This document shows, one piece after another, positions 1-61,419 of a DNA stretch of 64,000 nt. Position 1 is the first letter of the stretch; each line of letters starts with the position of its first letter. The translations under genes were made by a program, and so were the position numbers. The stretch comes from Glycera tridactyla (Eukaryota), in NCBI GenBank assembly GCA_965644265.1, contig OZ286470.1, positions 8,990,001 to 9,054,000 on the forward strand. Reading direction: 5' to 3'. The notes under the pieces were generated by a model. It did no database searches. It was not told the DNA's origin and saw only the letters and a program-made list of their open reading frames with translations.

Positions 1-327
1 AGCCAATGCAACTGTGTCAGTGGATGTATACTCCCCAGGGAGATGAGAAAGACTCAAGCTTGAACAGACCTGCCAAGGAATGTAATTGTAAAGTCGGGTG
101 AACTTGCTAAGGATACCAGACTGTAAACCACTACATTTACATTTATATTTACATCATTCCTGATCAAATAATGTTCCCTAATTTTGCCCAGGGCGATAGC
201 TGGCCATTCAGGGCCATCAGAAATACTACAATCGATTTATCAATACGAACAGGTCGAACGTGTGTGGCCTTGGGTGGTAGGTCGCGACACGTTATAGAAA
301 TATCATCTTGATGAAGATTCGCATAGG

Positions 328-477: not shown

Positions 478-1040
478 NNNNNNNNNNNNNNNNNNNNNNN
501 NNNNNNNNNNNNNNNNNNNNNNNNNNNNNNNNNNNNNNNNNNNNNNNNNNNNNNNNNNNNNNNNNNNNNNNNNNNNNNNNNNNNNNNNNNNNNNNNNNNN
601 NNNNNNNNNNNNNNNNNNNNNNNNNNNNNNNNNNNNNNNNNNNNNNNNNNNNNNNNNNNNNNNNNNNNNNNNNNNNNNNNNNNNNNNNNNNNNNNNNNNN
701 NNNNNNNNNNNNNNNNGACACAGGCAGACAGGAAGGCAGCCAGGCNNNNNNNNNNNNNNNNNNNNNNNNNNNNNNNNNNNNNNNNNNNNNNNNNNNNNNN
801 NNNNNNNNNNNNNNNNNNNNNNNNNNNNNNNNNNNNNNNNNNNNNNNNNNNNNNNNNNNNNNNNNNNNNNNNNNNNNNNNNNNNNNNNNNNNNNNNNNNN
901 NNNNNNNNNNNNNNNNNNNNNNNNNNNNNNNNNNNNNNNNNNNNNNNNNNNNNNNNNNNNNNNNNNNNNNNNNNNNNNNNNNNNNNNNNNNNNNNNNNNN
1001 NNNNNNNNNNNNNNNNNNNNNNNNNNNNNNNNNNNNNNNN
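478..1040. other. Assembly gaps (N runs 478-716 and 746-1040; others at 3281-3511, 4149-4300, 4356-4505, 5749-5912, 23615-24368)
   Basis: Runs of N, several bordered by microsatellite-like sequence; all poly-X ORFs in the track are artefacts of these gaps. Confidence 0.98.
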
Positions 1041-1311
1041 GTTAGGCATGCCGGACCCCTGATTGCAAGCCTCTCTGACGGCGACACCATTAGAAATCTC
1101 TGTCTTTGTGGCTTGACTCCATTCCGACGCTGTTTCATGTTCTGTTGTTGATGATGGTAGCGCTTTCATTGCCGATGATCACAGGTAATAGGAATTAATT
1201 ATGCAAAGTATGCAGTGTTTTTACTCCACATTATGACCATGAAAGCCTGCCACTACACCCTCATCATCCCTGTCACCAACTATCAAATGTAGATACTATT
1301 GAACTCTTCAT

Positions 1312-1700
1312 ATTCCAAATATGGCGGGTACGTTTCACACGATAAATTCGCTATTTTTCGTTTGATATCGGTTTTAATGGCACGAATGCATTGTACATGT
1401 CTTACGTCGATCATCAAACATGCATGTTTCAGGTACTGTGCGTGCTTTTGAAGAGGATTTTACACCATCATCTCTGATTTATTTCGGAAAATCCGCCGAC
1501 ATTATGAGCGATTATTGGTATATGAAACAATAGAGATACGCCCTGAAACCAGCGTGAAATTGACATATTTGGCATTCCAAGGTGTAAGATACCAGTAGAC
1601 TTCGCAGTAATCACATAGCGGAGATCTCAACGATGTATGTCAGCGTGTTTCGTTTGAATCCAATGCGAATTCGCGTTGTTGTGGCCAAAAAACGTACCAA
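1312..1700 (+). mobile_element. Internally deleted copy of a non-autonomous TIR DNA element (same family as 6598-7570)
   Basis: Shares ATGGCGGGTACGTTTCACACGATAAA with 6614-6640, and internal blocks (GAAACCAGCGTGAAAT, CGAATTCGCG) with 7330-7550. Confidence 0.65.
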
Positions 1701-1879
1701 AATTTTCACTGAAGTGTAGGTGGGCGCAGAGATTGGCTAAGCTCACAAGTATGTATAATGCCATTGTACTGCGAGCATGGACCAGTCATCATTTCAAAGC
1801 TGCTTCACTTATGAGCAACAGAGAATCATACCTCTAGTAGGGCATATTTTTGAAGATATGTATAATATGGTCGATATCG

Positions 1880-2315
1880 CGCACACGTGTACATGCGTTT
1901 GTGTGTATGTGTGTGCGCGTTTGTGTGTGAGTGTTTGTGCATGTGTGTGTGTATATATATTTGTGTGTGCGTGTGTGAGCTGGTGATGATGGTGAGTGCT
2001 AGTGTTGTGTGTGTGTGTGCGTGTGTGTATTTTTTGCATGTGTGAGTGTGTGAGCGTGTGCGTGTGTGTGTGAGCTGGGGAGGATGGTGAGTGCTAGTGT
2101 TGTGTGTGTGTGTGTGCGTGTGTAGGGTGTGGCATGTGAGCGTGTGTGTGTGCGTGAGCTGGGAGAATGGTGAGTGCTAGTAGTTGTGTGCGTGATTGGG
2201 CTGTTGTTACAGGGTTTAGTGGACTGATCCCGATCAGATAGACATGAGGATCAGAAACAAGGTCAGTCATGTCACTCGCTGCCTGCCATAGCATGACAGC
2301 CCAGCTCAGCCATGT

Positions 2316-2385
<70 letters not shown>

Positions 2386-2550
2386 GTGTGTGTGTGAGCT
2401 GGGAGGATGGTGAGTGCTAGTGTTGCGTGCGTGATTGGACTGTTGGAGCGGGGTTTAGTGGACAGATCCTGACCAGAGAGACATGAGGATTAGGCACAAG
2501 GTCGGTCATGTCACTTGCGGCCTGCCATAGCATGACAGCACAGCTCAACC
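1880..2550. repeat. (GT)n microsatellite complex with interspersed units and a ~155-bp duplication
   Basis: GAGCTGG..ATGGTGAGTGCTAG unit occurs four times between GT runs; ~2155-2310 is duplicated at ~2395-2545. Confidence 0.9.
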
Positions 2551-4044
2551 TTCAATACTAGCGCGATGCCTTGCGCATGGCCTATTGCAACAGCATTTGT
2601 CTCGCTGAGCGTCGATACATGCACCTATCTGATTCTCATTTCGTAATAGTGGAATAAAGATGGTGATGAATATCGATGGTTTCAAAGGTAGGAGAAGCAT
2701 TGGTAACATGATGAATGCCATCGAAAATCACCTCAAAAGAAATGAAAATCATGAAGCTTTATGAAGCCTCGAAAATGTCACCTTTGGACAAAAAGCACCC
2801 CTTTTCAGGGACCTCATCAAAGGATGTTGTGATCATATCATGCTATGAACGACCTTTCTCCAGAGACCACCTGTCTTGAAAGATCATTTCAATGCGACAA
2901 CGGGCCTTCTTTGTGGAATAATTCGATTAATTTTTTAGACATTTAAAAACAGTCACAATCAGGGATTGTAATGGATGGTAAACTTTCAATTTTTCTACCA
3001 ATGTTTGCCTGAAAAATAGAATAGGAACATAAAATAGATTTACGGTGGCATTGCGGTGACGTCGGCTGGTTCTAGATCAGCTTTGTTGTGAAAGATAACA
3101 AGACATGAACGGTGATAAAATAACAAGGATTATTTTGAGGTGGTTGAGAGCAAACTGGATGAATTGTGGGTTGGTAGCGGCTGCGACTTGCGTCACTACC
3201 ACTCTATCTCTGCCAAAATAGATGGGAAAGAATGAAAACATGCACCCCTCCCTACCTGTCCCTCCGTAGTCAAATCACATNNNNNNNNNNNNNNNNNNNN
3301 NNNNNNNNNNNNNNNNNNNNNNNNNNNNNNNNNNNNNNNNNNNNNNNNNNNNNNNNNNNNNNNNNNNNNNNNNNNNNNNNNNNNNNNNNNNNNNNNNNNN
3401 NNNNNNNNNNNNNNNNNNNNNNNNNNNNNNNNNNNNNNNNNNNNNNNNNNNNNNNNNNNNNNNNNNNNNNNNNNNNNNNNNNNNNNNNNNNNNNNNNNNN
3501 NNNNNNNNNNNCAACATGCCACTTCACCACAGCCGTCTATAGACAATAATTATGATAGGAGCATGCTAGGCTCATGCAACCAACTCTGTTCTGTGGTTGC
3601 TTACACGAAAGCCAGAAGAGAAAGGCTCAAGCTCATACTGGCCTTCCATAGAATGAAAGAGTAAAGTAGGGTGAACTTCATAAAGGTGCCAAACCGTGTT
3701 TTCATACACAATTTCCAAACATTTTCTAAATCTTCCCCATGATGGATGAACATTGGGAGTCGGTCACGAACCAGGTGAGCTTCATAAAGAAGCCAGTGAG
3801 GTGTTATTGTTGTGTCTAATCCATGCGAGCGCGGATTACGCACATGTTGCACGCCATTACTATCGCATCAGTTGACACGCTGCGATGCCATTTCCCTGGT
3901 AACGGCCACATTCGCGCGTATGAATGGGGCGCGAGGTGTGGCTCAAACGCGGGAAAAACAACACTTGGCGTACAAGAGATATTCCAGTGTTGGTATGGTA
4001 CATTCGTGCTGTGAATACACTCGGATTTAAATGGAACCCTGATA

Positions 4045-4076
<32 letters not shown>

Positions 4077-6189
4077 GATTTTCTGTCGTTCTGATTCGGT
4101 CCTACTCTACCCGTCTCTCTTCCTCTCTTCACCGATCTGTCCCAAAATNNNNNNNNNNNNNNNNNNNNNNNNNNNNNNNNNNNNNNNNNNNNNNNNNNNN
4201 NNNNNNNNNNNNNNNNNNNNNNNNNNNNNNNNNNNNNNNNNNNNNNNNNNNNNNNNNNNNNNNNNNNNNNNNNNNNNNNNNNNNNNNNNNNNNNNNNNNN
4301 CTCTCTCTATCTATCTATCTAACTTTCCCTCTATCTCCCTCTCCCTCTATCTATCNNNNNNNNNNNNNNNNNNNNNNNNNNNNNNNNNNNNNNNNNNNNN
4401 NNNNNNNNNNNNNNNNNNNNNNNNNNNNNNNNNNNNNNNNNNNNNNNNNNNNNNNNNNNNNNNNNNNNNNNNNNNNNNNNNNNNNNNNNNNNNNNNNNNN
4501 NNNNNGCACCCATTTCTCCTCAACCCAGCGGCACCCTTCATTTTTGTCAGCATAATTTTGGGGATTATGGACAGTGCAGTTGTTTGTTTTACGTCATGTG
4601 AGCACCATATGGGATATACTGAGACGTCCATGTAATTGCTGGGATGGATTGAGACCATTCACGACTCCTGCTTCTTGGTCATGAAGGAGAGCTAAAAACC
4701 ATTAAATTCACTGATACTTAAGGTGCCGTTTCTCGTATCTTGTGGGTTATGTCGTTGTTGTCGTTGTTGTTGTTGTTGCTGCTGGCTTTTTGAATAGTGG
4801 GAAGACAAATGTCTCGCTTCAGCCACATGCACCTCCGATCCAACACTGAGTGACATGAATGGATCGTGACTTTTACCACCATAAGTACCAGAAATGACAC
4901 CTAAGGGATCTGTGATTTTCCCAGAGAAGGGTGTTCCGAATGGTAACACCAAAGCACATTGTATAGGCGTCACAATATAGCACATATGTCGCTGACGCGA
5001 CATTAATCCAGAACCAACCAACCAATCGTCATCTCAATTGTATCATGTTTCGCTCTGACTCATAGGTGAATATAATTGTCAGCTAGAGATGGATTTCAAC
5101 GAAAGAGGAGCTCACTGTGTGCCACAAAATATGATCATCTCGCAGAGTCAGTATTTCCATTCAGTCTTTTCGTCAATGCAAGGACAACTGAGAGATGGTT
5201 TTTAGGCACTCTGCACCTTGAGATAATACGATAATCTATGGCAAGACATAGTGCAAAAAGGTCGGAATGGTTTCCGTACGATAACTTCGGAACTCGCAGG
5301 GCTAGCCTTTTCAAACTTGGTGTACCGACTTTCCTGGGTTATGGCAAGACACCTATTGATGTTGAGTTGGCCATTCATTATCAATGTCACTGCGTGCAAA
5401 AAGGTCACAAGGGTTTTCAGACAATAACTTCAAAATTCCGTGGGCTAGCCTTCTCAAATTTGGTGATTAGACTCCCCTAGGCTGTGGTGGACACCCATTT
5501 ATTATTATTCACAGAACCTTGAATCGGGCGATCTATAGATCTCCAGAAGTGTCCATGGGTAGGGTGGGAGAAAGTATCCAGCTCGCATAGACCGGGAACA
5601 CACGACATGCATAATCCTTTTGGATGATAGGTCATAACTCTCTAATATGTCTATGAACTTGTCAGCTAAGTGAACAAGAAATATCCCCCTTCCTACCCAG
5701 TGCAACGAACCAACCTCATACAGCACAATGCCAACATTTGTCAAGAATNNNNNNNNNNNNNNNNNNNNNNNNNNNNNNNNNNNNNNNNNNNNNNNNNNNN
5801 NNNNNNNNNNNNNNNNNNNNNNNNNNNNNNNNNNNNNNNNNNNNNNNNNNNNNNNNNNNNNNNNNNNNNNNNNNNNNNNNNNNNNNNNNNNNNNNNNNNN
5901 NNNNNNNNNNNNTCAATTACTGGGATGACGCTGCAAGATGCTCTGTCTGTCAGTAGTATCATCAGTAGGAGCAGCATCCGGTTGCCATGGGCAACTAGTT
6001 GCACTGATGAGACATTCTCCGTCACATCCCAAATCATTACCATCCTAATAAGGCAAATATGTACAAGATAGGAGTACAATGTAACACCGAGCTGATGAGC
6101 CATCTCATCATGATATGTGATATGTCATTAGAAACATGATACAATCCAACCTGTCCACATAGACCACCTCCGCATTGCATAACAATAGT

Positions 6190-33224: not shown

Positions 33225-33585
33225 CATTCTTCCATGTTAAGGTTCAACATGTTCATATTAGATAGTTAGAGGTGTGTCTGGACTGTCAGCTATTTTAATT
33301 TGACACTTTCCTGGACAGAACATCTGGGTTGATACGTACCACAAAAAATCAAACAAACAAATCAATCAGTGTACTGATGTAGGTATTTCATGAAAACTCA
33401 AGATGGCATTGAAAGTTTTAGAAGCTTGACAACCTTTCTGCCTCTGTATCACCTTGTGTTCAGGGTTTGTGAGAGTGGTGTCTGCAGGGGAGAGAACATC
33501 TAGCTTTCATTGACCCGGAACGCACGACATACATAATCCTCTTGATTGATACAATCTGTTAAACATCAGACAATAAATCAATCAC
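33225..33585 (+). mobile_element. Repeat family B: an internally deleted copy plus a second 3' half
   Basis: Two 3' ends: ...GGGTTGATAC..(AAAC/AATC)n at ~33330-33370 and ...GATACAATCTGTTAAACATCAGAC at ~33545-33580. Confidence 0.8.
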
Positions 33586-35229: not shown

Positions 35230-35430
35230 GTTGAGTAGGTAGAGGTGTGTCTGAACTGTCAGCTACTTTTACTTTACAACCTTTCAAGTTCCCCATCATC
35301 ATGTGTCCAGGGTTTGTGAGAGATATGTCTGAGAGGGAGAGGACATCTAGCTTCCATTAACCAAGAACACATGGCATACATAACCCAGGGTTGATACATG
35401 CGGTTAAACCACAGACGGACAAACAAATCC
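35230..35430 (+). mobile_element. Repeat family B, 5'-truncated copy (another at ~36230-36350)
   Basis: Core plus GGTTGATACATGCGGTTAAACC(ACAG/ACGG/AAAC) tail. Confidence 0.8.
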
Positions 35431-37898
35431 GAGACAAAATTTGCCGTCTTTGAGTATATCTCATATCACTCACCTCAGTCTTATCAATGATTGCAAGATT
35501 GAAATAAATTTAAATAACGCATAGTAGATAAGATGAAGGAGATATTATATTGAACTTTCGCTAATTGGAGAATATGTGAGGGAAAGAGGCTGTCCCGGAT
35601 GGTCATTTTGACATCACTCTCCTTGGTCCTACAAAATTATAATATGATCATTGCTGAATGATTTGTCATTGATGAATGACTATTTTATGTGCTGATAAGG
35701 TTCCTTGGAAACAATGTGTTGATGCAAATGTAAGCTTTGATACTCTGATATCGGAGTTACTCGCGGACTGAGAGTGTCTGTGAGCATTGTATTGATTCTT
35801 CAATTCCATATTTTGTACTCGCTCAAGAGCTTGTCATGCCCAATGGAATGGAGGTGCATTGTTGTTGTCAACAGTTGATTCAATTTGGTCATCCGGCTAA
35901 GAGCTGCCGTGAGTGATTTGTGGACCAGAGACAGCATCATGCAACAGAAGGTGGCAAAGTCATGATTGTTGGTGGCTCCGCCGTGCCGCCCGCATTCACC
36001 GCCATGCCTCGCCTGACATTCATCATTGTAGAGGTTGCCGTGGCAATTTATTATGTTCATGTCTCACTTGCCGCCGAGTCCATTAGGTCGGCAGTCATTT
36101 TTCCGCTTTGAATAGGTGTAGGTATACAAAGAAAACCATTACATGTGAAAGGTGCCTCATGCGTTCTGGATCAACCTATAGTCCAGTGTATCGGTCAGAT
36201 TTACATGCATGGTTTGTGATGTTTTCAGAATCATGCAATCTTTGTGTTGAGGGTTCATGAGAGTGATGTCTGCAGGGTCTTACTGAATCTGAAACTTTTG
36301 GAGATCAGGAACACATGGAATACATGATCCTTTGGGTTGATACCTGCTGGTAAACTTTTGGTTCTGTTGATGACTAACATCTCACTGGCACCATAGAGGT
36401 GCTTTGATAGAATGCATGTTCAAAGTCTTTGAGGTAGCTATACTGAGCGCCCTGGAACATCTCTCTTACAGATATCGGTGAATTGATACTTACTCCCAGA
36501 TACCACAATAATTTTGGTTAAAAATAGCTGGTTGTTCCTACATGCTTGTATGAGCTCTATCTGCCTGGAAAAGAACTGACAATAGCTCCCCAAAACACCC
36601 CAGATAAAATTTTGTGAAGAGGTTGTCTACTGTAGTAAAGACCATCATGATCACAGCTTAGGGTGGCATTTGTATGTGGCCTTTGTATAGAGGTGGTCTT
36701 TTGAGCGGGTCAGACAATATTTCAGAGAAAAATGATTCCGGTTGCAATAGAGGGTGGGACGATGGTGGCGGAGGTGGGGGCAACCAATTTGTATGTAACC
36801 TATGCTTTGTCCTGGTCATGTGGCGTAATGTGGATCAGGGGATCAATACTCTTTGATCATCCGACACCATCTGCCAATCTCAATCACCATCACAAATTCA
36901 GTAACATGGCTACCTGTCAAGAGTAACCTACTTACCTTCACTTCAATTTCTCACTCAACTGCCATGTTACGTAATGTTGAGCAATGTTATCACTTGAATG
37001 GGTGACCTAGCTTAGCCCGAACAAGTATCTAAGATTTGATATGTACCTGCACCTGTACATAGATCATGTGTGAAATAAGCGAATTCTTCATTTATTCACT
37101 CCGTCACTCAACCTGGGTGTGATTATATGACAGGCTGTGGAGGCAGTCATTAGGTGTCTACCAAAGGCATGCTCTGAGATGCCCTTTCATCAACGAATAG
37201 AAATTCAGCCTCAAAAGTAAATTGTAGATTCTTTATTTTATAACGAATAGAAAAAGTACAGTTGGCTGTCAAAAAGATGAGCTTCCGGAGAAAGAGTACA
37301 GTGAACCTGCAACAAGATACCACCTCTGATGGAGAGTGATTTTCATAGTAGCACAAGAGACCACCTGTTATGAGAGACCCCCATTTTGATGAGATTTAGG
37401 GTGGTCTCTTGTCAGAGGTTTCACTGTACACGATCTGTCGGTGATCTGCTATGTGTCAGCATGTCAGCGTATGCGAGCTGGATCCACATTTTATCAGCAT
37501 ATAGTAGCCGTATCATATTATGATTTTTTCTATATCCGGGACACCAACTGTATTATGAGAGGTTGGATATTTAAAAATATATTGCTAATATATGAGTTGA
37601 TAAATTCCTTGAGCCTCGATGAAGAATTTGATCTCACCCCTATCTATCATGCTCGTTGCATTGTGCACTATGATGATGGTTAGCAAGGCATGACAACTTT
37701 TTTTGGGCTGATGAGACTGGCACCAAATACTGCTTTGTCTTCTGAGATAATACCATGATTGATATATCGTATATAGAGTAAATTCATACAGCATATATAT
37801 CCAGTTGAATCTGTATTCAGCAGTAAGCCTTGGGAAGCCAACAAGTGGTTACTTGAGAAATCAAAATTTGGCTGCACAAGACAGGTGGTTGCTGAATA

Positions 37899-41529: not shown

Positions 41530-41822
41530 TCCATGTGCTTTGCTTAAAAAAAAGCATTGCCATCAGGCTTGACTGTCAGCTTCCAGCCAGTTACATATTT
41601 GGATATGCCACAATATGGTGAGTAGGTAGAGGTGTGTCTGAACTGTAAGCTACTTCCACTTGACAACCTTTCAGGCTCATCATCATCTTGTTCAGGGTTC
41701 TTGTAAGTGATTCCTGCGGGGGCCAGAACAGCTAGCTTTCATTGACGAGGAACACACAGCATACAAAATTCTCTGGGTTGATACATGTCGTTGAACATCA
41801 ATCAAGCAATCAATCAATCAAT
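41530..41822 (+). mobile_element. Repeat family B copy with (CAAT)n tail
   Basis: ...GGGTTGATACATGTCGTTGAACATCAATCAAGCAATCAATCAATCAATC. Confidence 0.82.
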
Positions 41823-52065: not shown

Positions 52066-52267
52066 CAGGGCTTTCCGTTAACTTTTTTCTTCGGCTGTCA
52101 CTCGAGCAGATGAAGTAGGATTTTTACCTGCCCTCCCTGTCATTTTCACCTGCCCTCCTGCATATAATCGTAGCCCAAATAAAGGTTGCGTACCTGTCCA
52201 TTGGGCAGGCAGATTGATGAAATCACCTGTCTGCCTGTGCCAGTAAGGCAACCACTGTAGAGCCCTG
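52066..52267. mobile_element. MITE family D nested in the HINE
   Basis: CAGGGCTTTCCG...GTAGAGCCCTG; flanks TAATG/TACTG. Confidence 0.85.
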
Positions 52268-52629
52268 TACTGTTATTTTAGAGAAATTTACTTTTTCAAA
52301 AAGATTTTTTGAGGAAAAGTACTTTTCCAAGCATACTTATGTATTGGGTCTTCCTATGCGATCAGGGACTGTATGCACCCATCAAAGAAGCAGCACTGTT
52401 TTGTTTTGTAAACCTCAGATATAAATGCCTTTCTTGAAGCGGCGTGTTGTGTGGCTTCGCCAAGGCGAGGTCTGCCTTCAGTGAAGGCTATGTTTGATGC
52501 TGTTGATATGTAAAAAAACTTTCTAATCTCATCTTTGAGTCAACGCTACCATACATGCTACGATCAAATTTCTTGATTTTTCATTGAGCTCCTTTGAATG
52601 ATCAGTGAACAAATATCAAGAAATATATA

Positions 52630-52890
52630 ACCAAAATATCTCTACTCTCTTATAGGCATAGCATAGCAATGAGTAGGCCCCTTGTGTGTGTATTTGTTGC
52701 TGACCAAGTACAGTCAAACCTGTCTATAAAGACCGCCTTCAGTCGCATCAAAAAGTGGTCTCTATAGGCAGGTGGTCTTTATAGAGAGGTAATTTACTGT
52801 TGAAAATACTACAATGGTCGCAGCTCAGGGTGGTCTTTATAGAGAGGTGGTCTCTATAGAGAGGTGGTCTTTAGAGCAGGTTCGACTGTA
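52630..52890 (+). repeat. Left arm of a 261-bp inverted duplication (79 bp unique flank plus family A MITE 52711-52888)
   Basis: Reverse complement of 55100-55360 with one mismatch (GAGTAGGCCC vs GAGTGGGCCC). Confidence 0.97.
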
Positions 52891-53402
52891 TTTTCAACAG
52901 TAAATGACCTCTATAAAGACCACCTGCCCATAAAGACCGCGTTTTGATGCGACCGAAGGCGGTCTTTATAGACAGGTTTGACTGTACCTTGCTTATGCCT
53001 ATCTGATCCACTCGGTGAAGTTCGCCTACTCCATCTGCTATACCATGAATAACAATACCATAATACAGTGAAACCTGTGATAAATGTCACCTAAATGTCA
53101 CCAGGAAGCAGGTCCTGAAGAAGGGAGTTCCCACATTAGATGTATACAGTCTGACTCTATAAAGAGCACCTGAGCTGCGACCGTGGTAGTATTTTCAACA
53201 GTAAATGACCTCTCTATGAAGACCACCTGCCTATAAAAACCGCTTTTTGATGCGACTGAAGGCGGTCTTTATAGACATGTTTGACTGTATTTGACTCTGT
53301 CAAATAGAACAACTAATGCCGAGGTGGTCTCTCATCAGGGGTCTCATTGCAGGTTCAATGCTCCATCTCTCATTATGGTATCTGACAATATCATGGGAAT
53401 GT

Positions 53403-53575
53403 TTTTGTTTGTTTGAGGTCTAACGGTATGTATCAACCCTAGGGTCATGTATGCCATGTGTTAATGGTTAATGAATGCTGCATATTCTCTCACCTGCAAA
53501 CCTCACTCCCACAAACCATGAACACAAGATGATGGCGATCCTGAAAAGTTATCACGATGAAGTAGTTGACAGTTG
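53403..53575 (-). mobile_element. Repeat family B copy in minus orientation, inside the inferred inversion
   Basis: Reverse complement of the family B 3' half, with the (TTTG)n tail on the left. Confidence 0.8.
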
Positions 53576-53924
53576 CATTATCATAGGAATCATATTGTGG
53601 GGTGTTACATAATCATTTTGGAATTGAGACAAATCATTTGGGGTTGATTACGAGACAGGAGATTTGAGAGCGACCAATCTGGATGATGTCCATACATAAA
53701 AGTGAAAGATTAGTTCATGGATTGTGATGTAATTGATGCAAAACTCATCACAACGAGATGGGGAACATTTCACATTGAAGTCATTAATTAGCTATTGAGT
53801 TGCACACTTCACAGACATTCTTGCACATCAAAAACTCATACACCATCAGACACTCACACCTTTTTAAATGTTCTCAGATAGCCTACATAGACCCAACTTT
53901 AGAAAAATGCTGTCGATTACTATG

Positions 53925-53938
53925 GTAACCATGGCAAC
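53925..53938. promoter_or_regulatory. RFX X-box-like motif
   Basis: GTAACCATGGCAAC, overlapping a second imperfect box ATTACTATGGTAAC. Confidence 0.45.
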
Positions 53939-55099
53939 CAACAGAAACCAACTCAATTTCAGTTGAAATCAAATATCAATAAATTAAGCCACAAAAGATG
54001 GCCATTGTAGTTACATGCATCTAAGATATTCATGGCTGGTTCCCTCCAGGCAATAAAGTCTTAGGTAGTCCTCATAAATTCTCCCCATAAATTTGGTTAA
54101 TTTACGACGGGATTATAATAATCACATTTTATGATGGGATGGCTTGCTGCTCGGATGGTGATTGGCTGCGTTACAAGGTGACAGACCCTCACCAAGTGTA
54201 CTTGATGCACCAGCAAACTCAGCCCATCTTTGATACATCAACATTTGTGAGTTATGATCATGATTGTGAAAGGCAAAATGTTTTGGACTATAATAGTACT
54301 TATACAGAAAAAGCATCGTCGAGCCTGTCCCAAGCATGTGAGGAAGGGAAGATACAAAGTATGCTTAGGACAGGTGCATGCCTGGTACAACCACCTCATC
54401 TCAGTAACCACCTACTTATAGATAAAATCTGCATGGATTTGACAACGAGTACTGAGCCAATAGTGTAAAACAACAAAGTTGGGTAGTTGTTTAGTTGCAA
54501 GTACCGTGAACTCTTTACACGAGATCCTTAGAACTCTTGAGATTCCTACAAGCTGTTCCTTCTGGTCAATCTGTCACAATAGTGAGGTATCAGCATATAT
54601 AAGATAGAAGTTGGTCCAACAAGTGAGTAAAAATATGCAGCAGTACGAGGCATCCAAGTGTGGTCATGGCGATGATTTTTCACGCCCACCTCATATTGTT
54701 GCCAGGGAGAGATGGAATAATGCGGGGATGCTCATGCACTGGAGAATACAATTTGCTGAGAAAAATTTCATTTTTGTTTCTATACTGATGATCGCAAATA
54801 CCTGTCCTGCGGATGGGAATTTACACAGTAATACAGTTGAACCTTCCGGAGACCACCTCTACACAAAGGTCACCTGCCTATAAAGGTCACCCTGACCTGT
54901 GAAAGATAGTATCTTCAACAGTAAACAGCCTCTCTCTGAAGACCATCTTTTGATATGACCGAGGGTGGTCGACAGGTTTTACTATCTCTAAACACAGGTG
55001 AGTGGGCTTGTTTGACTTAAAAACCTGAAATATCATTGAGGGATTACTCGGCTATCTATCCATGCTTTGCCCAATTTTGATTATTAAACCTGCACAATG

Positions 55100-55360
55100 T
55101 ACAGTCGAACCTGCTCTAAAGACCACCTCTCTATAGAGACCACCTCTCTATAAAGACCACCCTGAGCTGCGACCATTGTAGTATTTTCAACAGTAAATTA
55201 CCTCTCTATAAAGACCACCTGCCTATAGAGACCACTTTTTGATGCGACTGAAGGCGGTCTTTATAGACAGGTTTGACTGTACTTGGTCAGCAACAAATAC
55301 ACACACAAGGGGCCCACTCATTGCTATGCTATGCCTATAAGAGAGTAGAGATATTTTGGT
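55100..55360 (-). repeat. Right arm of the 261-bp inverted duplication
   Basis: See 52630-52890. Confidence 0.97.
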
Positions 55361-56117
55361 TTGGTTTTGGTTATTTTGGTCAGGTTTGACTGTACTACCC
55401 CGGTCACAGCTCAGGTGGTCTTTCTAGAGAGGTGGTCTTTATAGAGAGGTGGTCTTTAAAGAATGTTCGACTGTAATACGGAAGACAGATGATGGGTGGA
55501 GTCTGACAGAGGTCGTAAGTATCATGGCCTCAATTGCTCAATGTTGGTCTCACAAAACCAATTTACACTGCTTACCCAGATAACATCCTTCAAACATGAT
55601 TTTCTGGATTCATATTTGTGAACTTTAGTTTTGTTTGTAACAGCAATCAAACAATACAAAGTTTGTTCCTTTCCCGAATGACGATAACTTCACATACAAT
55701 CAACTGCAAGATAATGATGAATGAATGAGTCATTTACAGAATGATAAGAGCCATGATATCAGTGATATGAATAATGATCATTATGAATCATTACAATTAC
55801 CAAAATTATCATTACAATTATCAAAATGAATCATTACAATTACCAAGGATACAGATCTTTCATGAATGTTTTAAATGCAGATGTACTCATGCTTCCAGCT
55901 TCAGGATTCCTGTCCACACATAGATTTCATCTCCTCGCCGCGAGCACTTTAAAATTACGCTCACTGATTACAAATTTCTGCTTAGGAATTTCAAGAAAGG
56001 GTTTAGTCCAAGATCAAGTTCGGTGTCCGTGTTCGGGGTTAGACAGCTTACAGATTGGCTCACATGTATAATGTCCATTCAGAACATTATTCATGTGCAC
56101 CAGCTTGTCTTCAGCCC

Positions 56118-56160: not shown

Positions 56161-56391
56161 ATATTATTACAGATATTACTACGCCACTGACAACATGATC
56201 TGCTGAGAACTCCCTTACAAATACTGCCGATGGGGGGTGTTGGGGAAGTGTTCGAACGAGATTTCAACTAATGTAAGAAGATCGCAAGACATAGAAACCA
56301 CAGATGTGATTTGGGAAATACGAACATCGCCATTTCCGGACCAAAAGACGAACTTTTCTACGGGGCTACAGCAACAATAGTCAAAGCGTCC

Positions 56392-57336
56392 ATGACGACG
56401 AAATCGGTGAAACGTAAACAAGACCTGAATACGTCAGCTACCGATGACCCGCCACTGGAAACTCCTGTAAAGAAAGTTAAGTCAGTACCAAACATAAACA
56501 TTGACTTTTATTGCCCGCCTGGACAAAGTACACCATACAAGCAAGCAGTTGAGCCTTCCATCTCATCATATATTACCGAAGAAAGCACAATTGTAAGAGA
56601 CGAAACCATGGATGACACGTCTGAAGACTCGAAGAAGGATGAACACCCGCTAAGTGCTTCGGAAGAGTTCACACACAATTTTCTAATTGCCTTACAAGAC
56701 GATAATGTGAAACTCATTCTGGCCAGTCTTCTAAAAGGAATGTCAGCTGAGCAAAATACCAAAATTGCCGAACTTGAATCAAGAGTGTGTGATCAGGAAC
56801 AGAAGATAACTAGACTAGAAGAAAAAATTGCTGAACGTCAAATGTCAAAGGTGACGGGACCGCCAATCCAACAACTGTATCAACCTGCAAAAGATGACAG
56901 CGAGGAGAGGGAGATGAATCTAGTAATAAGAGGTATAGACGAGCGTGCAAATGCACAAATGGCTGTTACAAAACTCATAAACGATGAGGTCGGGATCCCT
57001 TTCCCGCCTATGGCCATAGCAAACTGCGTCAGACTTGGCCGCCCCTCGCACGAAAAACACCGGCCATTGAAGGTCTCTTTCAGAGACAGAAGCTGGAGGG
57101 ACATGGTTTACAAAGCCCGTCTAAACTTGCGCGACAGGCTACCAGATGTGTTCATACAGGAAGATATTAGTAGGGAAACGAGTCAGCTGGCATATAAAGC
57201 CAGGCAGAAAGTTCGCGAAGGACTGATAAATCGAACATGGATCGCGAACGATAAAGTGTTTATTGTGAAATCAGCTGGAGAAGAAGCGATCCAGATTTCG
57301 ACACAAGACCAACTGCCACCGACCCCGGAATTATAA
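56392..57336 (+). CDS. LINE ORF1 (coiled coil plus L1-type RRM/CTD-like region), ~314 aa from the first ATG
   Basis: Heptad stretch QNTKIAELESRVCDQEQKITRLEEKI, then NLVIRGIDE...NCVRLGR...RPLKVSF...VFIQED...AR..VR.G.I..TW, typical of LINE ORF1 proteins. Frame is open from 56311. Confidence 0.85.
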   Translation: MTTKSVKRKQDLNTSATDDPPLETPVKKVKSVPNINIDFYCPPGQSTPYKQAVEPSISSYITEESTIVRDETMDDTSEDSKKDEHPLSASEEFTHNFLIALQDDNVKLILASLLKGMSAEQNTKIAELESRVCDQEQKITRLEEKIAERQMSKVTGPPIQQLYQPAKDDSEEREMNLVIRGIDERANAQMAVTKLINDEVGIPFPPMAIANCVRLGRPSHEKHRPLKVSFRDRSWRDMVYKARLNLRDRLPDVFIQEDISRETSQLAYKARQKVREGLINRTWIANDKVFIVKSAGEEAIQISTQDQLPPTPEL

Positions 57337-58326: not shown

Positions 58327-61300
58327 ATGATCCCATATCCCCCATGGGAAGGTATTATTGTGTATATTCTTAGCTTCCTGAAACTGTCTACCTTAAACAG
58401 TGGCAGTATATATATTTTAAAACCAAAAAAAATCTCCACACCACATGATATAAAATGTTATCATCTCACCTGTCAAGAAAAATCACTTGACATAGAACCG
58501 AATCTATCATTACTTATCTTACTATCAGGTGACATTTCCAGGAATCCTGGACCCCCAAACACTTTTAGAGATTTAAGTAGACTAGCTGGGATTACGATAT
58601 CGCATTTGAACATATGCAGCATTATAAACAAAGTCGATGAACTTACCAGAGTTTTACGTGAGAGCAATACTGATATCCATTTTACCAGCGAGACCTGGCT
58701 AAAGCCACATATACTTGATAATGAAATATCTATTGGTGGGTACTATACTATGAGGAACGATAGAATGGGTGCGAGAGGTGGAGGCCTATGTGTGCATGTT
58801 AAGGAGAGATTTATCACAAACCAAATCGACTCACTATGTAAATCAACCCCTAACTGTGAAACCATTGGTCTAGAGCTGAAGTTACCACATACCCGTAGAA
58901 TCTTTATCATTGGTGTGTATAGGCCCCCTTCGGGGTCTATAACAGGGTTTTTGGATGATATGGGTGAAATCCTTGACTATACGATTGGTATACCAGGCTG
59001 TGAAATAAATATTTGTGGGGATTTCAATATAGATCTGCAAAGAAATAGAACAGTAGAATATAAGAGGCTAAAAAGTTGGAGTGCAACTTATGGTCTCACT
59101 CAACTGATCTCTGGACCAACCAGAATAGGCCTACACGGTGACTCATGTATTGACCATATCTATACAAATCGTACAAATTTCTGTTCTTTCTCTGGCTGTA
59201 TTACACATGGCATCAGTGACCATGATCTCATTTACCTTTGCCGCAAAAAACCAAAAATCAGTGGCAATATGTCTTATATACGTACACGAACTTTTTCGAA
59301 ATTTGTAGAAACTGACTTCCTAGCGAGGCTATCAAGAACAGACTGGGAGCCAGTTATATCCGAAAATGACCCAAACCAAGCATGGGATAAATTCCTAACT
59401 ATCTTTATCCCTATTTGTGATATATACGCCCCATTTAAAAATATAAAGATCAAGGGAACTATTCCGCCCTGGCTAACAAATGATTATTTCTCGGCAGCTG
59501 ATGAAAGAGACTACCTCTATAGTGTTTTCAAAACATCTAGGACTGAGCACAATAAAGAGAGAGCGAAACATGCAAAAAATTTCGCCAACACGCTAAATCG
59601 AAACCTGAAGCGTGAGTACATTTGTAATAAAATAAAAGAAAACAAGCACGACGGCAGAAAACTATGGAAGACCCTGAGAGAGATCGTACCTGACTCTAAA
59701 TCCAATAAGAACCTTATTAAATCCATAAATGGTGAAACGGACCCGTCGAGTATGTCAAATAGTCTAAATGATTTTTTCGCAAATATAGGAGAAAATCTTG
59801 CATCTAAAATCCCTCCTGGGCACCCAGAAATAATACCTGAAATCCCTGGATGTGAAATAGAAATGGAAATTTGTGAAATTGATATTGATGAAGTTGAAAA
59901 ACATTTGAATGCCATCTCATGTTCTAAATCTACCGGCATTGATGGCATAAATGCCAGATTATTAAAATGTGCCCATAAACAAATTGCGGCTCCTATTCAT
60001 CATATAATCAACAAATCACTAACAAAGAATATCTTTCCAAATAAATGGAAATATGCCCGGATCTCTCCTTTATTTAAAGATGGCGATCGCGATAGTCCTG
60101 AAAATTACCGCCCAATCTCTGTCCTGCCAATTCTTGGCAAAATTTTGGAAAGAATCTTTCATGACCAATTTTACACATATATTACAAATCAGAATGTCTT
60201 ACACCATGCTCAGTCCGGCTTTCGAAAGAATCATTCTACAACGTCATGTAACCTATCTGTTATGACCGATTTGCTGTCAGCTATGGATAGAGGCCTCAAG
60301 ATCGGAGTGATATTCTTAGACCTCAAGAAGGCGTTCGATACTGTAGACCATAAGTTGCTATGTCGAAAATTGCAGATGTATGGTATGGGACACGGTGTCG
60401 AACGCTGGATCGGAAATTACCTGTCGGATAGAATTCAAGTTACCTCGTGTAATGGTACCATCTCTGAGCCTAAGTCCGTAAATTGCGGGGTACCTCAAGG
60501 GTCAATCCTCGGACCACTATTGTTTATATTATACATAAACGATATGCCAAATGTCTTATTGAATAGTAAAATCTCTCTGTATGCTGATGATACAGCTATC
60601 TACTATGAATCATCTGATCTGGAAGAAATGGAAACTTGTCTCCAACAAGATCTTGCTGCAGTCGAAAATTGGATGAATGTAAATAAATTATCCCTGAATG
60701 CAAGAAAATCCAAAGTTATGCTTTTCGACAGAAGCCAACAGTGTGACTGTAATATAACAGTAACTGTTAAAGAAGAACCTTTGGAGCTTGTCACGCACTT
60801 TAAATACTTAGGGTTATATCTCGATAAGAAGCTCTCTTTTGACTACCATATAGAGCAACTCTGCAAAAAATCAAAACAAAAACTCGCAAGTCTGGGCAGA
60901 GTAAGAAAGTTTATTTCTGAAGAGACGACAATGTTACTTTATAAGAGCCTACTACTACCCGTACTCGAATATGGTGACACTGTCTATGCAACAGCAAAAA
61001 TCTCAGACTTAACAAAGGTACAGCGTATCCAAAATTCGGCCTGCAGAATCATATTGATGGCTGATAAGAGAACGCATATCAATGAGATGCACAATAATCT
61101 GAAACTATTTTACTTATCTGACAAACGCTTCTATAATCTGTGCGTACAGACCTATAAATGTCTAAACTCATTGTCTCCAAATTATCTGTGTGAGTCTCTG
61201 AGATATGTCAGAGACTATCATACAAGAACTACAAGGTCTGCAGTCAAAAATGACCTGATTGTTCCCCATAGTAGAACTAGAGCAGGTGAACAAACTTTTC

Positions 61301-61419
61301 CTAGCAGGGCTGCATCAGTATGGAACTCAATCCCAAGTTCCATTAGAGAATCTGAAACTCTACGAAGCTTTAAATCTGCTTTATGGTCTTATCTATCCGT
61401 ACAATATAACTTTGAGTAG
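58327..61419 (+). CDS. LINE ORF2: APE endonuclease plus reverse transcriptase, 1030 aa, with an N-terminal 2A-like motif
   Basis: EN motifs HLNICS, SETWL, GVYRPP, GDFNID, IDHI, SDHD; RT motifs NYRPISVL, QSGFR, FLDLKKAFDTVDH, GVPQGSILGP, LYADD, KYLG; LLILLSGDISRNPGP at residues 62-76. Confidence 0.97.
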   Translation: MIPYPPWEGIIVYILSFLKLSTLNSGSIYILKPKKISTPHDIKCYHLTCQEKSLDIEPNLSLLILLSGDISRNPGPPNTFRDLSRLAGITISHLNICSIINKVDELTRVLRESNTDIHFTSETWLKPHILDNEISIGGYYTMRNDRMGARGGGLCVHVKERFITNQIDSLCKSTPNCETIGLELKLPHTRRIFIIGVYRPPSGSITGFLDDMGEILDYTIGIPGCEINICGDFNIDLQRNRTVEYKRLKSWSATYGLTQLISGPTRIGLHGDSCIDHIYTNRTNFCSFSGCITHGISDHDLIYLCRKKPKISGNMSYIRTRTFSKFVETDFLARLSRTDWEPVISENDPNQAWDKFLTIFIPICDIYAPFKNIKIKGTIPPWLTNDYFSAADERDYLYSVFKTSRTEHNKERAKHAKNFANTLNRNLKREYICNKIKENKHDGRKLWKTLREIVPDSKSNKNLIKSINGETDPSSMSNSLNDFFANIGENLASKIPPGHPEIIPEIPGCEIEMEICEIDIDEVEKHLNAISCSKSTGIDGINARLLKCAHKQIAAPIHHIINKSLTKNIFPNKWKYARISPLFKDGDRDSPENYRPISVLPILGKILERIFHDQFYTYITNQNVLHHAQSGFRKNHSTTSCNLSVMTDLLSAMDRGLKIGVIFLDLKKAFDTVDHKLLCRKLQMYGMGHGVERWIGNYLSDRIQVTSCNGTISEPKSVNCGVPQGSILGPLLFILYINDMPNVLLNSKISLYADDTAIYYESSDLEEMETCLQQDLAAVENWMNVNKLSLNARKSKVMLFDRSQQCDCNITVTVKEEPLELVTHFKYLGLYLDKKLSFDYHIEQLCKKSKQKLASLGRVRKFISEETTMLLYKSLLLPVLEYGDTVYATAKISDLTKVQRIQNSACRIILMADKRTHINEMHNNLKLFYLSDKRFYNLCVQTYKCLNSLSPNYLCESLRYVRDYHTRTTRSAVKNDLIVPHSRTRAGEQTFPSRAASVWNSIPSSIRESETLRSFKSALWSYLSVQYNFE

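What the first reader, a model, noticed from the sequence alone, without database searches (positions are those of the whole stretch)
52630..55474. Recent 2.47-kb inversion with a 261-bp inverted breakpoint duplication and a MITE split in two
Seen: 52630-52890 and 55100-55360 are reverse complements with one mismatch, including 79 bp of non-repeat flank. 52891-52986 is the inverted left half of a family A MITE (ending ...GTTGAAAATAC), and 55393-55474 is the matching right half (TACTACCCCGGTC...) in + orientation; joined, they rebuild one MITE, with TAC shared at both junctions. 55361-55394 is filler made of local pieces (TTTTGGT stutters plus CAGGTTTGACTGTA). The only minus-strand family B SINE (53403-53575) lies inside the segment. 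Inference: the ancestral order flank-MITE1-S-MITE2 was inverted by a staggered break or template switch at one end and a break inside MITE2 at the other. Near identity of the arms implies a very recent, possibly polymorphic event.
Basis: partly seen in the sequence, partly recalled or inferred. Interest (0 to 1): 0.78.

Follow-up and report, generated by a model that had tools for sequence, protein, structure and literature searches.

The report
MITE-mediated small inversion with flank duplication
A 262-base inverted duplication brackets a roughly 2.2-kb stretch of repeat-rich, apparently non-coding DNA, but the "MITE split in two" was most likely split by a second copy of the same small transposon inserting at the family's usual self-insertion site, so this looks like a transposon-driven rearrangement of a known kind rather than random chromosome breakage.

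Summary
52629-52890 and 55100-55361 are reverse complements, 262 bp with one mismatch. Each arm is 80 bp of sequence found nowhere else in the genome plus a whole 182-bp MITE. 52888-52986 and 55393-55475 are complementary halves of a second MITE, M2.

The interpretation needs revision. This is a TA-duplicating MITE family with about 52,000 copies. Its central TA is a self-insertion hotspot. The junction "MITE end-TA-centre of another copy" occurs 641 times in the orientation seen here and 625 times in the other. The "filler" is a chain of overlapping exact copies of nearby sequence, ending in the 12-nt MITE terminus next to TA.

The block 55100-55392 has the anatomy of a maize "Composite Insertion": a transposon terminus with a duplicated donor flank, a microhomology junction, then the other terminus.

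My best reading is that copy M1 was integrated by transposase into M2's centre. The flank was captured by aborted repair or re-replication synthesis. The segment was inverted either by the topology of that event or by a later flip between the identical arms.

An inversion remains likely (about 0.8 over all mechanisms). No outgroup, second haplotype or reads were available. This is a known kind of event, of moderate interest.

The parts
52629..52708 (+). A: 80-bp unique flank, the outer part of the left arm
   Evidence: Reverse complement of 55282-55361 with one mismatch. The only two copies in the genome are these.
52709..52890 (+). M1: complete 182-bp MITE (TA + CAGTCAAACCTG ... CAGGTTCGACTG + TA), the inner part of the left arm
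   Evidence: Identical to rc 55100-55281. It is 2.7% from the consensus of the 51 sampled plain copies, a sample chosen partly by similarity to this element. It folds with a 30-bp terminal stem, z = -5.2.
52891..52986 (-). Lo': left half (positions 1-98) of a second MITE, M2, inverted and joined to M1's right end through TA
   Evidence: 92% identity to M1 positions 1-101, reverse strand. The junction is identical to 641 genome-wide nested junctions.
52987..55099 (.). S: 2,113-bp spacer. It holds a shortened MITE (53127-53293, minus strand), a family B SINE (53403-53575), about 1.2 kb found nowhere else in the window (53600-54830) and a degenerate MITE (54832-54948).
   Evidence: ORFs in S have no Pfam match.
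55100..55281 (-). M1': inverted copy of M1, the inner part of the right arm. It is preceded by ...CAATG, which would be M1's ancestral right flank.
55282..55361 (-). A': inverted copy of flank A, the outer part of the right arm
55362..55380 (+). Stutter filler made of overlapping exact snippets of the A'/P' boundary and of the start of A'
   Evidence: 55365-55374 = rc 52627-52636, which runs 2 nt beyond the arm into P. 55372-55380 = rc 52630-52638. 55376-55383 = 55283-55290.
55381..55392 (-). l': 12-nt MITE left terminus (CAGGTTTGACTG) abutting TA
   Evidence: 55381-55396 is identical to 55268-55283, which is the end of M1' plus TACT. It forms the canonical 'L end-TA-R half' nested junction seen in loci L004-L030.
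55393..55475 (+). Ro: TA plus the right half (positions 99-182) of M2, plus orientation
   Evidence: 88% identity to M1 positions 99-182. Its best genome matches are plain 182-bp elements.

Best explanation
Two ordinary copies of one TA-duplicating MITE, M1 and M2, lay about 2.2 kb apart in direct orientation. M1 was flanked by unique DNA A. The family's transposase joined M1's termini to the central TA of M2, which is the family's self-insertion hotspot. That made both TA junctions: M1 right end-TA-left half of M2, and M1 left end-TA-right half of M2.

The event was not a clean cut-and-paste. At the left-end junction, synthesis copied M1 and ran 80-82 nt on into its donor flank A. It then stalled, stuttered, and was joined by microhomology to a 12-nt stub of the left terminus. 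This is the architecture that Zhang et al. 2014 call a Composite Insertion.

The enclosed 2.2 kb is inverted for one of two reasons. Either the ends came from sister chromatids, or were only nicked, and attacked a target on the same molecule, a topology that gives an inversion flanked by inverted element copies. Or the two 262-bp identical arms recombined afterwards and flipped the spacer.

Shown: the duplication, the junction anatomy, the hotspot and the snippet structure of the filler. Inferred: transposase involvement, the order of steps, and the inversion itself.
For: (1) The arms are 262 bp with one mismatch. The flank A occurs only at these two places.

(2) The inner end of the arms falls exactly at the MITE terminus plus TA. 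The other side of the left junction starts exactly at M2's centre.

(3) The same junction occurs 641 times genome-wide, and its mirror orientation 625 times, against 51,804 intact centres. That is about 2.4% of copies, whereas I estimate that MITE centres make up roughly 0.04% of the genome's TA sites. Near-equal orientations, and inner elements of both TIR variants (CAGG and GAGG), argue for recurrent insertion.

(4) Comparison of plain and nested elements shows TA duplicated on insertion. All 51 sampled plain copies carry TA, or a one-base variant of it, at both ends.

(5) The window's four quarters rebuild a full nested element. It aligns end to end at 85-92% with the 25 nested copies that carry the outer right half.

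(6) The filler plus stub tiles as exact local snippets overlapping by 3-5 nt. One snippet reads 2 nt into P, so P-A was contiguous when the filler was made.

(7) The family was mobile late. Copies on different chromosomes are 98.4-98.9% identical only over the 181-185 bp of the element. This is compatible with arms at 0.4% divergence (1 mismatch in 262).

(8) The block's anatomy matches Composite Insertions: transposon termini flanking a donor-flank duplication, with a microhomology junction (PMC4270019). Alternative transposition is a known source of inversions, and the same paper cites rearrangements caused by Sleeping Beauty, a Tc1/mariner element (PMC8225341).

(9) The SINE in S is opposite to the five others in the window.
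Against: There is no outgroup, second haplotype or read data, so the ancestral order is inferred only.

TA flanks every copy of this MITE, so the 'target duplication' at M2's centre cannot be told apart from M1's own flanking TAs.

The 12-nt stub can also be read as one more templated snippet, ending in a 4-nt TACT microhomology with M2's centre. That reading needs no transposase.

Most family copies are 3-15% from consensus, so activity at the time of the event is plausible but not shown. No autonomous partner element was sought.

The present arrangement is not the simple 'Composite Insertion inside M2' isomer. It needs either a special topology or an additional flip.

M1's left terminus carries a CpG-decay change, CAGTCAAACC where the consensus has CAGTCGAACC.
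Confidence: 0.45

Rival explanations
1. Ancestral order was flank-M1-S'-M2. It was inverted in one transposase-independent event, by staggered nicks 262 bp apart at one end and a break in M2 at the other, or by two replicative template switches. The second junction was closed by polymerase-theta-type stutter.
For: It accounts for every segment exactly once, plus the 262-bp duplication. The filler, including the 12-nt stub, tiles as a chain of templated snippets with 3-5-nt overlaps, ending in TACT microhomology with M2's centre. There is a 3-nt GTA microhomology at 52888-52890. Inverted duplications at inversion breakpoints are well documented (PMC1885836).
Against: One breakpoint must fall to the base at M1's terminus and the other at M2's central TA, in the configuration that reproduces a junction present about 1,270 times as a transposition product. 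I estimate the chance at 1e-4 or less. The model gives no reason for either position.
Confidence: 0.17
2. An older, ordinary nested element (M2 with another copy already in its centre, inverted) lay 2.2 kb from plain M1. Homologous recombination between M1 and the inverted inner copy flipped the spacer. A recent gap repair then copied M1, overran into flank A, and was closed by microhomology-mediated end joining.
For: Nested elements are common, so both TA junctions would be inherited with no positional coincidence. Recombination between inverted repeats is the classical route to inversions. Overrun followed by stutter fits synthesis-dependent repair.
Against: It needs at least two rare events. 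Only about 1.2% of copies are nested in this orientation. A 182-bp repeat diverged by 6-10% is a poor recombination substrate. The zero mismatches across all 182 bp require that almost the whole inner copy was replaced. The nearest relatives of both M2's right half and M1 are plain elements, so descent from an amplified composite has no support.
Confidence: 0.12
3. No inversion occurred. The left element (L-R-L') and the right fragment (12-nt stub plus R half) are independent partial nested copies. A 262-bp inverted copy of A+M1 plus filler was inserted at the right by templated break repair.
For: Two of 27 nested copies lack the outer R half, so partial forms exist. Templated insertions from nearby DNA are a known product of break repair (my own knowledge, not checked here). 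No outgroup shows that S was ever in the other orientation.
Against: It requires two rare partial elements that happen to be exactly complementary quarters of one nested element, lying next to each other. It also requires the copied tract to end exactly at the MITE terminus. The SINE orientation argues mildly against it.
Confidence: 0.08
4. A nested element already carried a 97-bp insert (A' plus stutter) flanked by a 16-bp direct repeat. A staggered-break inversion then duplicated the inner MITE plus A' to the left side, so that P|A (52628/52629) and S|M1' (55099/55100) are the new junctions.
For: 55268-55283 and 55381-55396 are a perfect 16-bp direct repeat around 97 bp. All four quarters of a nested element would be contiguous before the event.
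Against: A is unique in the genome, so the insert is not a known mobile sequence. One filler snippet continues 2 nt into P, which implies that P-A already existed. One nick must still fall exactly at the inner MITE's terminus.
Confidence: 0.04
5. Assembly artefact. One or both junctions are chimeric.
For: The region is rich in repeats. No reads were available. Only one haplotype is present in the assembly.
Against: 262-bp repeats 2.2 kb apart are far below long-read length. The junctions have the fine structure of biological repair products, not of assembler joins.
Confidence: 0.05

Closest known systems
Composite Insertions and inversions from alternative (reversed-ends or sister-chromatid) transposition of maize Ac/Ds (Zhang et al. 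2014, PMC4270019; Sharma et al. 2021, PMC8225341)
   Same: Transposon termini sit at both ends of a block that contains a duplicated stretch of donor flank. The two parts are joined internally by microhomology. The block is flanked by the element's target dinucleotide. An inversion is bounded by inverted element copies.
   Different: The superfamily is different, with a TA target rather than hAT's 8-bp duplication. The element is a 182-bp non-autonomous MITE. The scale is tiny: 80-bp flank and a 12-nt stub, against kilobases in maize. The target is the centre of another copy of the same MITE. The present isomer needs a flip or a sister-chromatid topology. Nothing was observed happening; everything is inferred from one assembly.
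Inversions with inverted duplications at breakpoints from staggered breaks (Ranz et al. 2007, PMC1885836)
   Same: A formerly single-copy stretch is now present in inverted orientation at both ends of an inverted segment, and the copies are nearly identical.
   Different: The duplication is at one end only. Both junctions coincide to the base with transposon landmarks. One junction carries a chain of templated snippets.
Nested insertions and self-insertion of MITEs (reviewed for plant MITEs in PMC5172404; clustered insertions in carrot Stowaway-like elements, PMC3695323; neither paper was opened, only listed)
   Same: A MITE sits inside another MITE at a preferred site, with the target duplicated.
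   Different: Here one specific TA at the exact centre of the element takes about 2.4% of all copies, in both orientations. One such nested pair is also associated with a rearrangement.
Ectopic recombination between inverted transposon copies.
   Same: Inverted copies of one element lie at both ends of an inverted segment.
   Different: It does not by itself give a duplicated unique flank, a stutter junction or a terminus stub. The exchange of target duplications that marks this mechanism cannot be read when the duplication is TA.

Membership tests
Tc1/mariner-type (Stowaway-like) MITE | TA target-site duplication | tested here: met
   The plain centre reads ...GAAAA-TA-CTAC.... Nested copies read ...GAAAA-TA-[CAGTC...GACTG]-TA-CTAC.... 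All 51 sampled plain copies have TA, or a one-base variant of it, at both ends, with unrelated flanks beyond.
Tc1/mariner-type (Stowaway-like) MITE | Terminal inverted repeats, small size, no coding capacity, high copy number | tested here: met
   12-14-nt TIR CAGTCGAACCTG/CAGGTTCGACTG. Length 182 bp. At least 51,804 copies. The element folds with a 30-bp terminal stem.
Tc1/mariner-type (Stowaway-like) MITE | An autonomous DDE transposase element with matching termini in the same genome | not tested
Composite Insertion / alternative transposition | Block bounded by the two transposon termini and flanked by the target duplication | tested here: met
   The right terminus is at 55102, after TA 55100-55101. 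The left terminus ends at 55392, before TA 55393-55394. Caveat: TA also flanks every donor copy, so this is weak evidence.
Composite Insertion / alternative transposition | Duplicated donor-flank DNA inside the block, with the two parts joined by microhomology or end joining | tested here: met
   A' (80 bp, otherwise unique) is followed by 19 nt of overlapping templated snippets and a CAG overlap into the stub.
Composite Insertion / alternative transposition | Both halves of the target lie directly beside the block | tested here: not met
   The right half of M2 adjoins the block. The left half adjoins the other M1 copy at 52891, 2.2 kb away and inverted. A flip between the arms or a sister-chromatid topology is needed.
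Composite Insertion / alternative transposition | Transposase active when the event occurred | tested here: inconclusive
   The youngest inter-chromosomal pairs of copies differ by 1.1-1.6%. The arms differ by 0.4%, with a wide error on 1 mismatch in 262.
Staggered-break inversion (Ranz et al. 2007) | Inverted duplication of ancestrally single-copy DNA at the breakpoints | tested here: met
   A is duplicated and inverted, and is otherwise unique. The duplication is at one end only.
Staggered-break inversion (Ranz et al. 2007) | Ancestral collinear arrangement seen in an outgroup or another haplotype | not testable with these tools
   The genome has no relatives in the collection. There is no second haplotype copy of A.
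Recombination between inverted repeats (NAHR) | Inverted homologous repeats existed at both breakpoints before the event | not testable with these tools
   Inverted copies exist now. Whether the right one predates the inversion cannot be told from one assembly.

The most novel reading that the evidence does not exclude
This locus would be a natural, fixed or segregating footprint of alternative transposition with aborted re-replication, a miniature Composite Insertion plus inversion. It would have been made by a Tc1/mariner-type MITE aiming at the centre of another copy of itself. Self-targeting MITE families would then be a recurrent source of small inversions and flank duplications in this genome.
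Probability: 0.3. Interest if true: 0.55.

Novelty: new member of a known kind. Interest (0 to 1): 0.4.

Why it matters
Small inversions are hard to detect and their origins are rarely resolved to the base. Here both junctions can be read exactly.

The reading shifts the cause from random breakage to the transposon's own chemistry followed by error-prone repair. If that is right, it shows outside maize Ac/Ds, for a very abundant MITE, how aberrant transposition both inverts DNA and copies neighbouring unique sequence.

It also reveals a strong self-insertion hotspot: about 1,270 nested copies at one TA. That matters for repeat annotation, because nested copies look like "split" elements. It also matters for any scan that treats split MITEs as rearrangement breakpoints.

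The locus itself has no recognisable gene, so a direct effect on the organism is unlikely.

Tried and rejected
1. Diagnostic substitutions between inner and outer elements of nested copies, to test whether the window's quarters descend from an amplified composite. The inner and outer consensus sequences are identical, and the shared variants are CpG decay or homoplasy. The test is uninformative.

2. Apparent plain-subfamily markers in M2's right half (C at positions 106 and 131). These proved mutually exclusive among the best hits. They are an artefact of picking the closest matches from about 52,000 copies.

3. Other copies of flank A, or of P+A, that might show the ancestral junction or an alternative haplotype. 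None exist. 52250-52495 is a separate young high-copy repeat, and the rest is unique.

4. Genes spanning the region whose exon orientation could show an inversion. The ORFs in S have no Pfam match. The neighbours are a LINE and low-complexity ORFs.

5. A hairpin-tip explanation for a break at M2's centre. The fold puts the central TA in a small loop, but the element is not a simple hairpin. This is weak.

6. Earlier notes of this scan. Nothing was recorded near the locus. Genome-wide notes confirm only that the genome is rich in MITEs.

7. Fetching loci of the other nesting orientation.

8. The large protein searches, structure tools and complex prediction were not used. Nothing here depends on a protein.
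Full report
WHAT IS THERE. The window is G000:C31:8,990,001-9,054,000 of a 2.04-Gb eukaryotic assembly in 207 contigs.

52629-52890 and 55100-55361 are reverse complements: 262 bp with one mismatch, at 52675/55315. Identity ends abruptly on both sides. Each arm has two parts. The outer 80 bp (A, 52629-52708) occurs nowhere else in the genome. The inner 182 bp (M1, 52709-52890) is a complete MITE.

Directly after the left arm, 52891-52986 is the left half of another copy (M2), inverted. At 55393-55475 lies the right half of M2 in plus orientation. Against M1 the two halves cover positions 1-101 and 99-182. Between the right arm and that half lie 31 nt (55362-55392).

THE MITE FAMILY. The element is 182 bp with termini CAGTCGAACCTG...CAGGTTCGACTG. 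It always sits between TA and TA, and the flanks beyond are unrelated. The unsplit centre (...GTTGAAAA-TA-CTACC...) is found 51,804 times at two or fewer mismatches.

Copies are mostly 3-15% from consensus. However, pairs on different chromosomes are 98.4-98.9% identical over exactly the 181-185 bp of the element and not beyond. The family was therefore still moving at about 1% divergence.

THE KEY RESULT. A search with the whole region returned dozens of loci that match 52707-52986 as one unit, at 88-94%. In 27 of them the architecture is R'-TA-L-R-TA-L', where L is positions 1-98 and R is positions 99-182. This is one MITE inserted at the central TA of an inverted copy of itself, with TA duplicated.

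Pattern counts give 641 copies of the junction "R end-TA-L' from the centre", the sequence at 52890/52891. They give 625 copies of the opposite nesting orientation at the same TA. Inner elements of both TIR variants (CAGG and GAGG) occur in both lists.

About 2.4% of all copies thus sit in a site that I estimate makes up roughly 0.04% of the genome's TA dinucleotides. That estimate rests on an assumed TA frequency, not on a tool result. The near-equal orientations are what repeated insertion into a symmetric hotspot predicts.

The window's four quarters, put in order, align end to end at 85-92% with the 25 nested copies that carry the outer right half. So 52890/52891 is not a unique breakpoint sequence. 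It is the standard product of this transposon inserting into itself.

THE SECOND JUNCTION. The 31-nt "filler" resolves completely.
- 55365-55374 is an exact copy of rc 52627-52636. This is the end of A plus 2 nt of the sequence to its left, P.
- 55372-55380 copies rc 52630-52638.
- 55376-55383 copies 55283-55290, the start of A'.
- 55381-55396 copies 55268-55283, the last 12 nt of the MITE plus TACT.

Successive pieces overlap by 3-5 nt. The last 12 nt are the exact left terminus of the MITE, abutting TA and the right half of M2. This is the other canonical nested-insertion junction. The snippet that reads 2 nt into P indicates that P and A were already contiguous when the filler was made.

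WHAT THIS MEANS FOR THE INVERSION. If the two halves of M2 were ever one element, the DNA between them must have been inverted, whatever the mechanism, because the halves now face opposite ways.

The SINE in S lies opposite to all five other copies in the window. By my own rough Bayesian estimate this gives about fourfold support for inversion.

What changes is the cause. Random staggered breaks or template switches would have to hit M1's terminus and M2's central TA to the base, in the configuration that mimics a transposition product. I estimate this at 1e-4 or less.

I tried to decide whether the nested structure was inherited from an amplified composite or made here. Inner and outer consensus sequences are identical, so there are no diagnostic sites. 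The closest relatives of both M1's and M2's right halves are plain elements. That gives no support for descent from a composite.

MOST LIKELY MECHANISM (inferred). M1's ends were joined by transposase to the hotspot TA in M2, 2.2 kb away.

The block 55100-55392 reads, from left to right: right terminus, whole M1, TA, 80-82 nt of M1's donor flank, a microhomology and stutter junction, a 12-nt left-terminus stub, TA. This is the anatomy of the Composite Insertions described for maize Ac/Ds. There, transposon ends inserted ahead of a fork are re-replicated together with flanking DNA. Synthesis aborts, and the broken ends are fused at microhomology (PMC4270019). Alternative transposition is also a documented source of inversions, and the same paper cites rearrangements caused by Sleeping Beauty, a Tc1/mariner element (PMC8225341).

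In the present arrangement the left half of M2 adjoins the left M1 copy rather than the block. So one of two things happened. Either the ends came from sister chromatids, or were only nicked, and attacked the same molecule, which gives an inversion flanked by inverted copies directly. Or a simple Composite Insertion was followed by a flip between the 262-bp identical arms. I cannot separate these two.

An older nested element plus recombination and gap repair gets 0.12, and no inversion 0.08. A pre-existing 97-bp insert plus staggered inversion gets 0.04, and an artefact 0.05. The remainder is unassigned.

LIMITS. There is one assembly, no reads, no relatives and no second haplotype.

TA flanks every copy, so the target duplication is uninformative. 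The 12-nt stub can also be read as a templated snippet with TACT microhomology. The autonomous partner element was not sought. The arms could be older than they look if they homogenise by gene conversion.

SIGNIFICANCE. There is no recognisable gene in or next to the segment. The nearest coding feature is a LINE at 58.3-61.4 kb.

This is a clear, base-resolved example of a transposon-associated micro-inversion with flank capture. It comes with a strong self-insertion hotspot as a by-product. It is a new member of known kinds of event and of moderate interest.

Noticed in passing
genome-wide; in the window at 52888-52892 and 55391-55396: The central TA of this 182-bp MITE is a self-insertion hotspot. 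There are 641 nested junctions in one orientation and 625 in the other, against 51,804 intact centres. Nested copies of about 364 bp are dispersed on many chromosomes. Split MITEs of this family should not be read as breakpoints by default.
   Followed up: partly
window 52250-52500: A young high-copy repeat. At least 40 other copies are 92-98% identical over about 246 bp. It ends near 52495-52510, just before an A-rich run (GTAAAAAAAC), which looks like a SINE tail.
   Followed up: no
window 58327-61419 (+), with 56311-57336 (+) upstream: A 1,030-aa ORF with endonuclease/exonuclease/phosphatase and reverse-transcriptase domains, so a LINE. The 341-aa ORF upstream has no Pfam match and may be its ORF1.
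   Followed up: partly
window 15805-15905, 33427-33573, 35254-35423, 36222-36343, 41641-41809, 53403-53575: Six copies of one SINE family. The five outside the segment all lie on the same strand. This may reflect an orientation bias, for example inside a transcribed region.
   Followed up: partly
window 52709-52986: The L-R-L' unit folds as single-stranded DNA into a roughly 98-bp-stem hairpin (-108 kcal/mol, z = -22). Nested copies of this family are therefore strong cruciform or hairpin formers and potential fragile sites.
   Followed up: no
loci L084-L098 versus L041-L075: The family has two terminus variants that change together on both ends: CCTG...CAGG and CCTC...GAGG. This looks like subfamilies with co-varying inverted repeats.
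   Followed up: no
window 478-5912 and 23615-24368: Seven runs of N, 1,985 bases in all.
   Followed up: no
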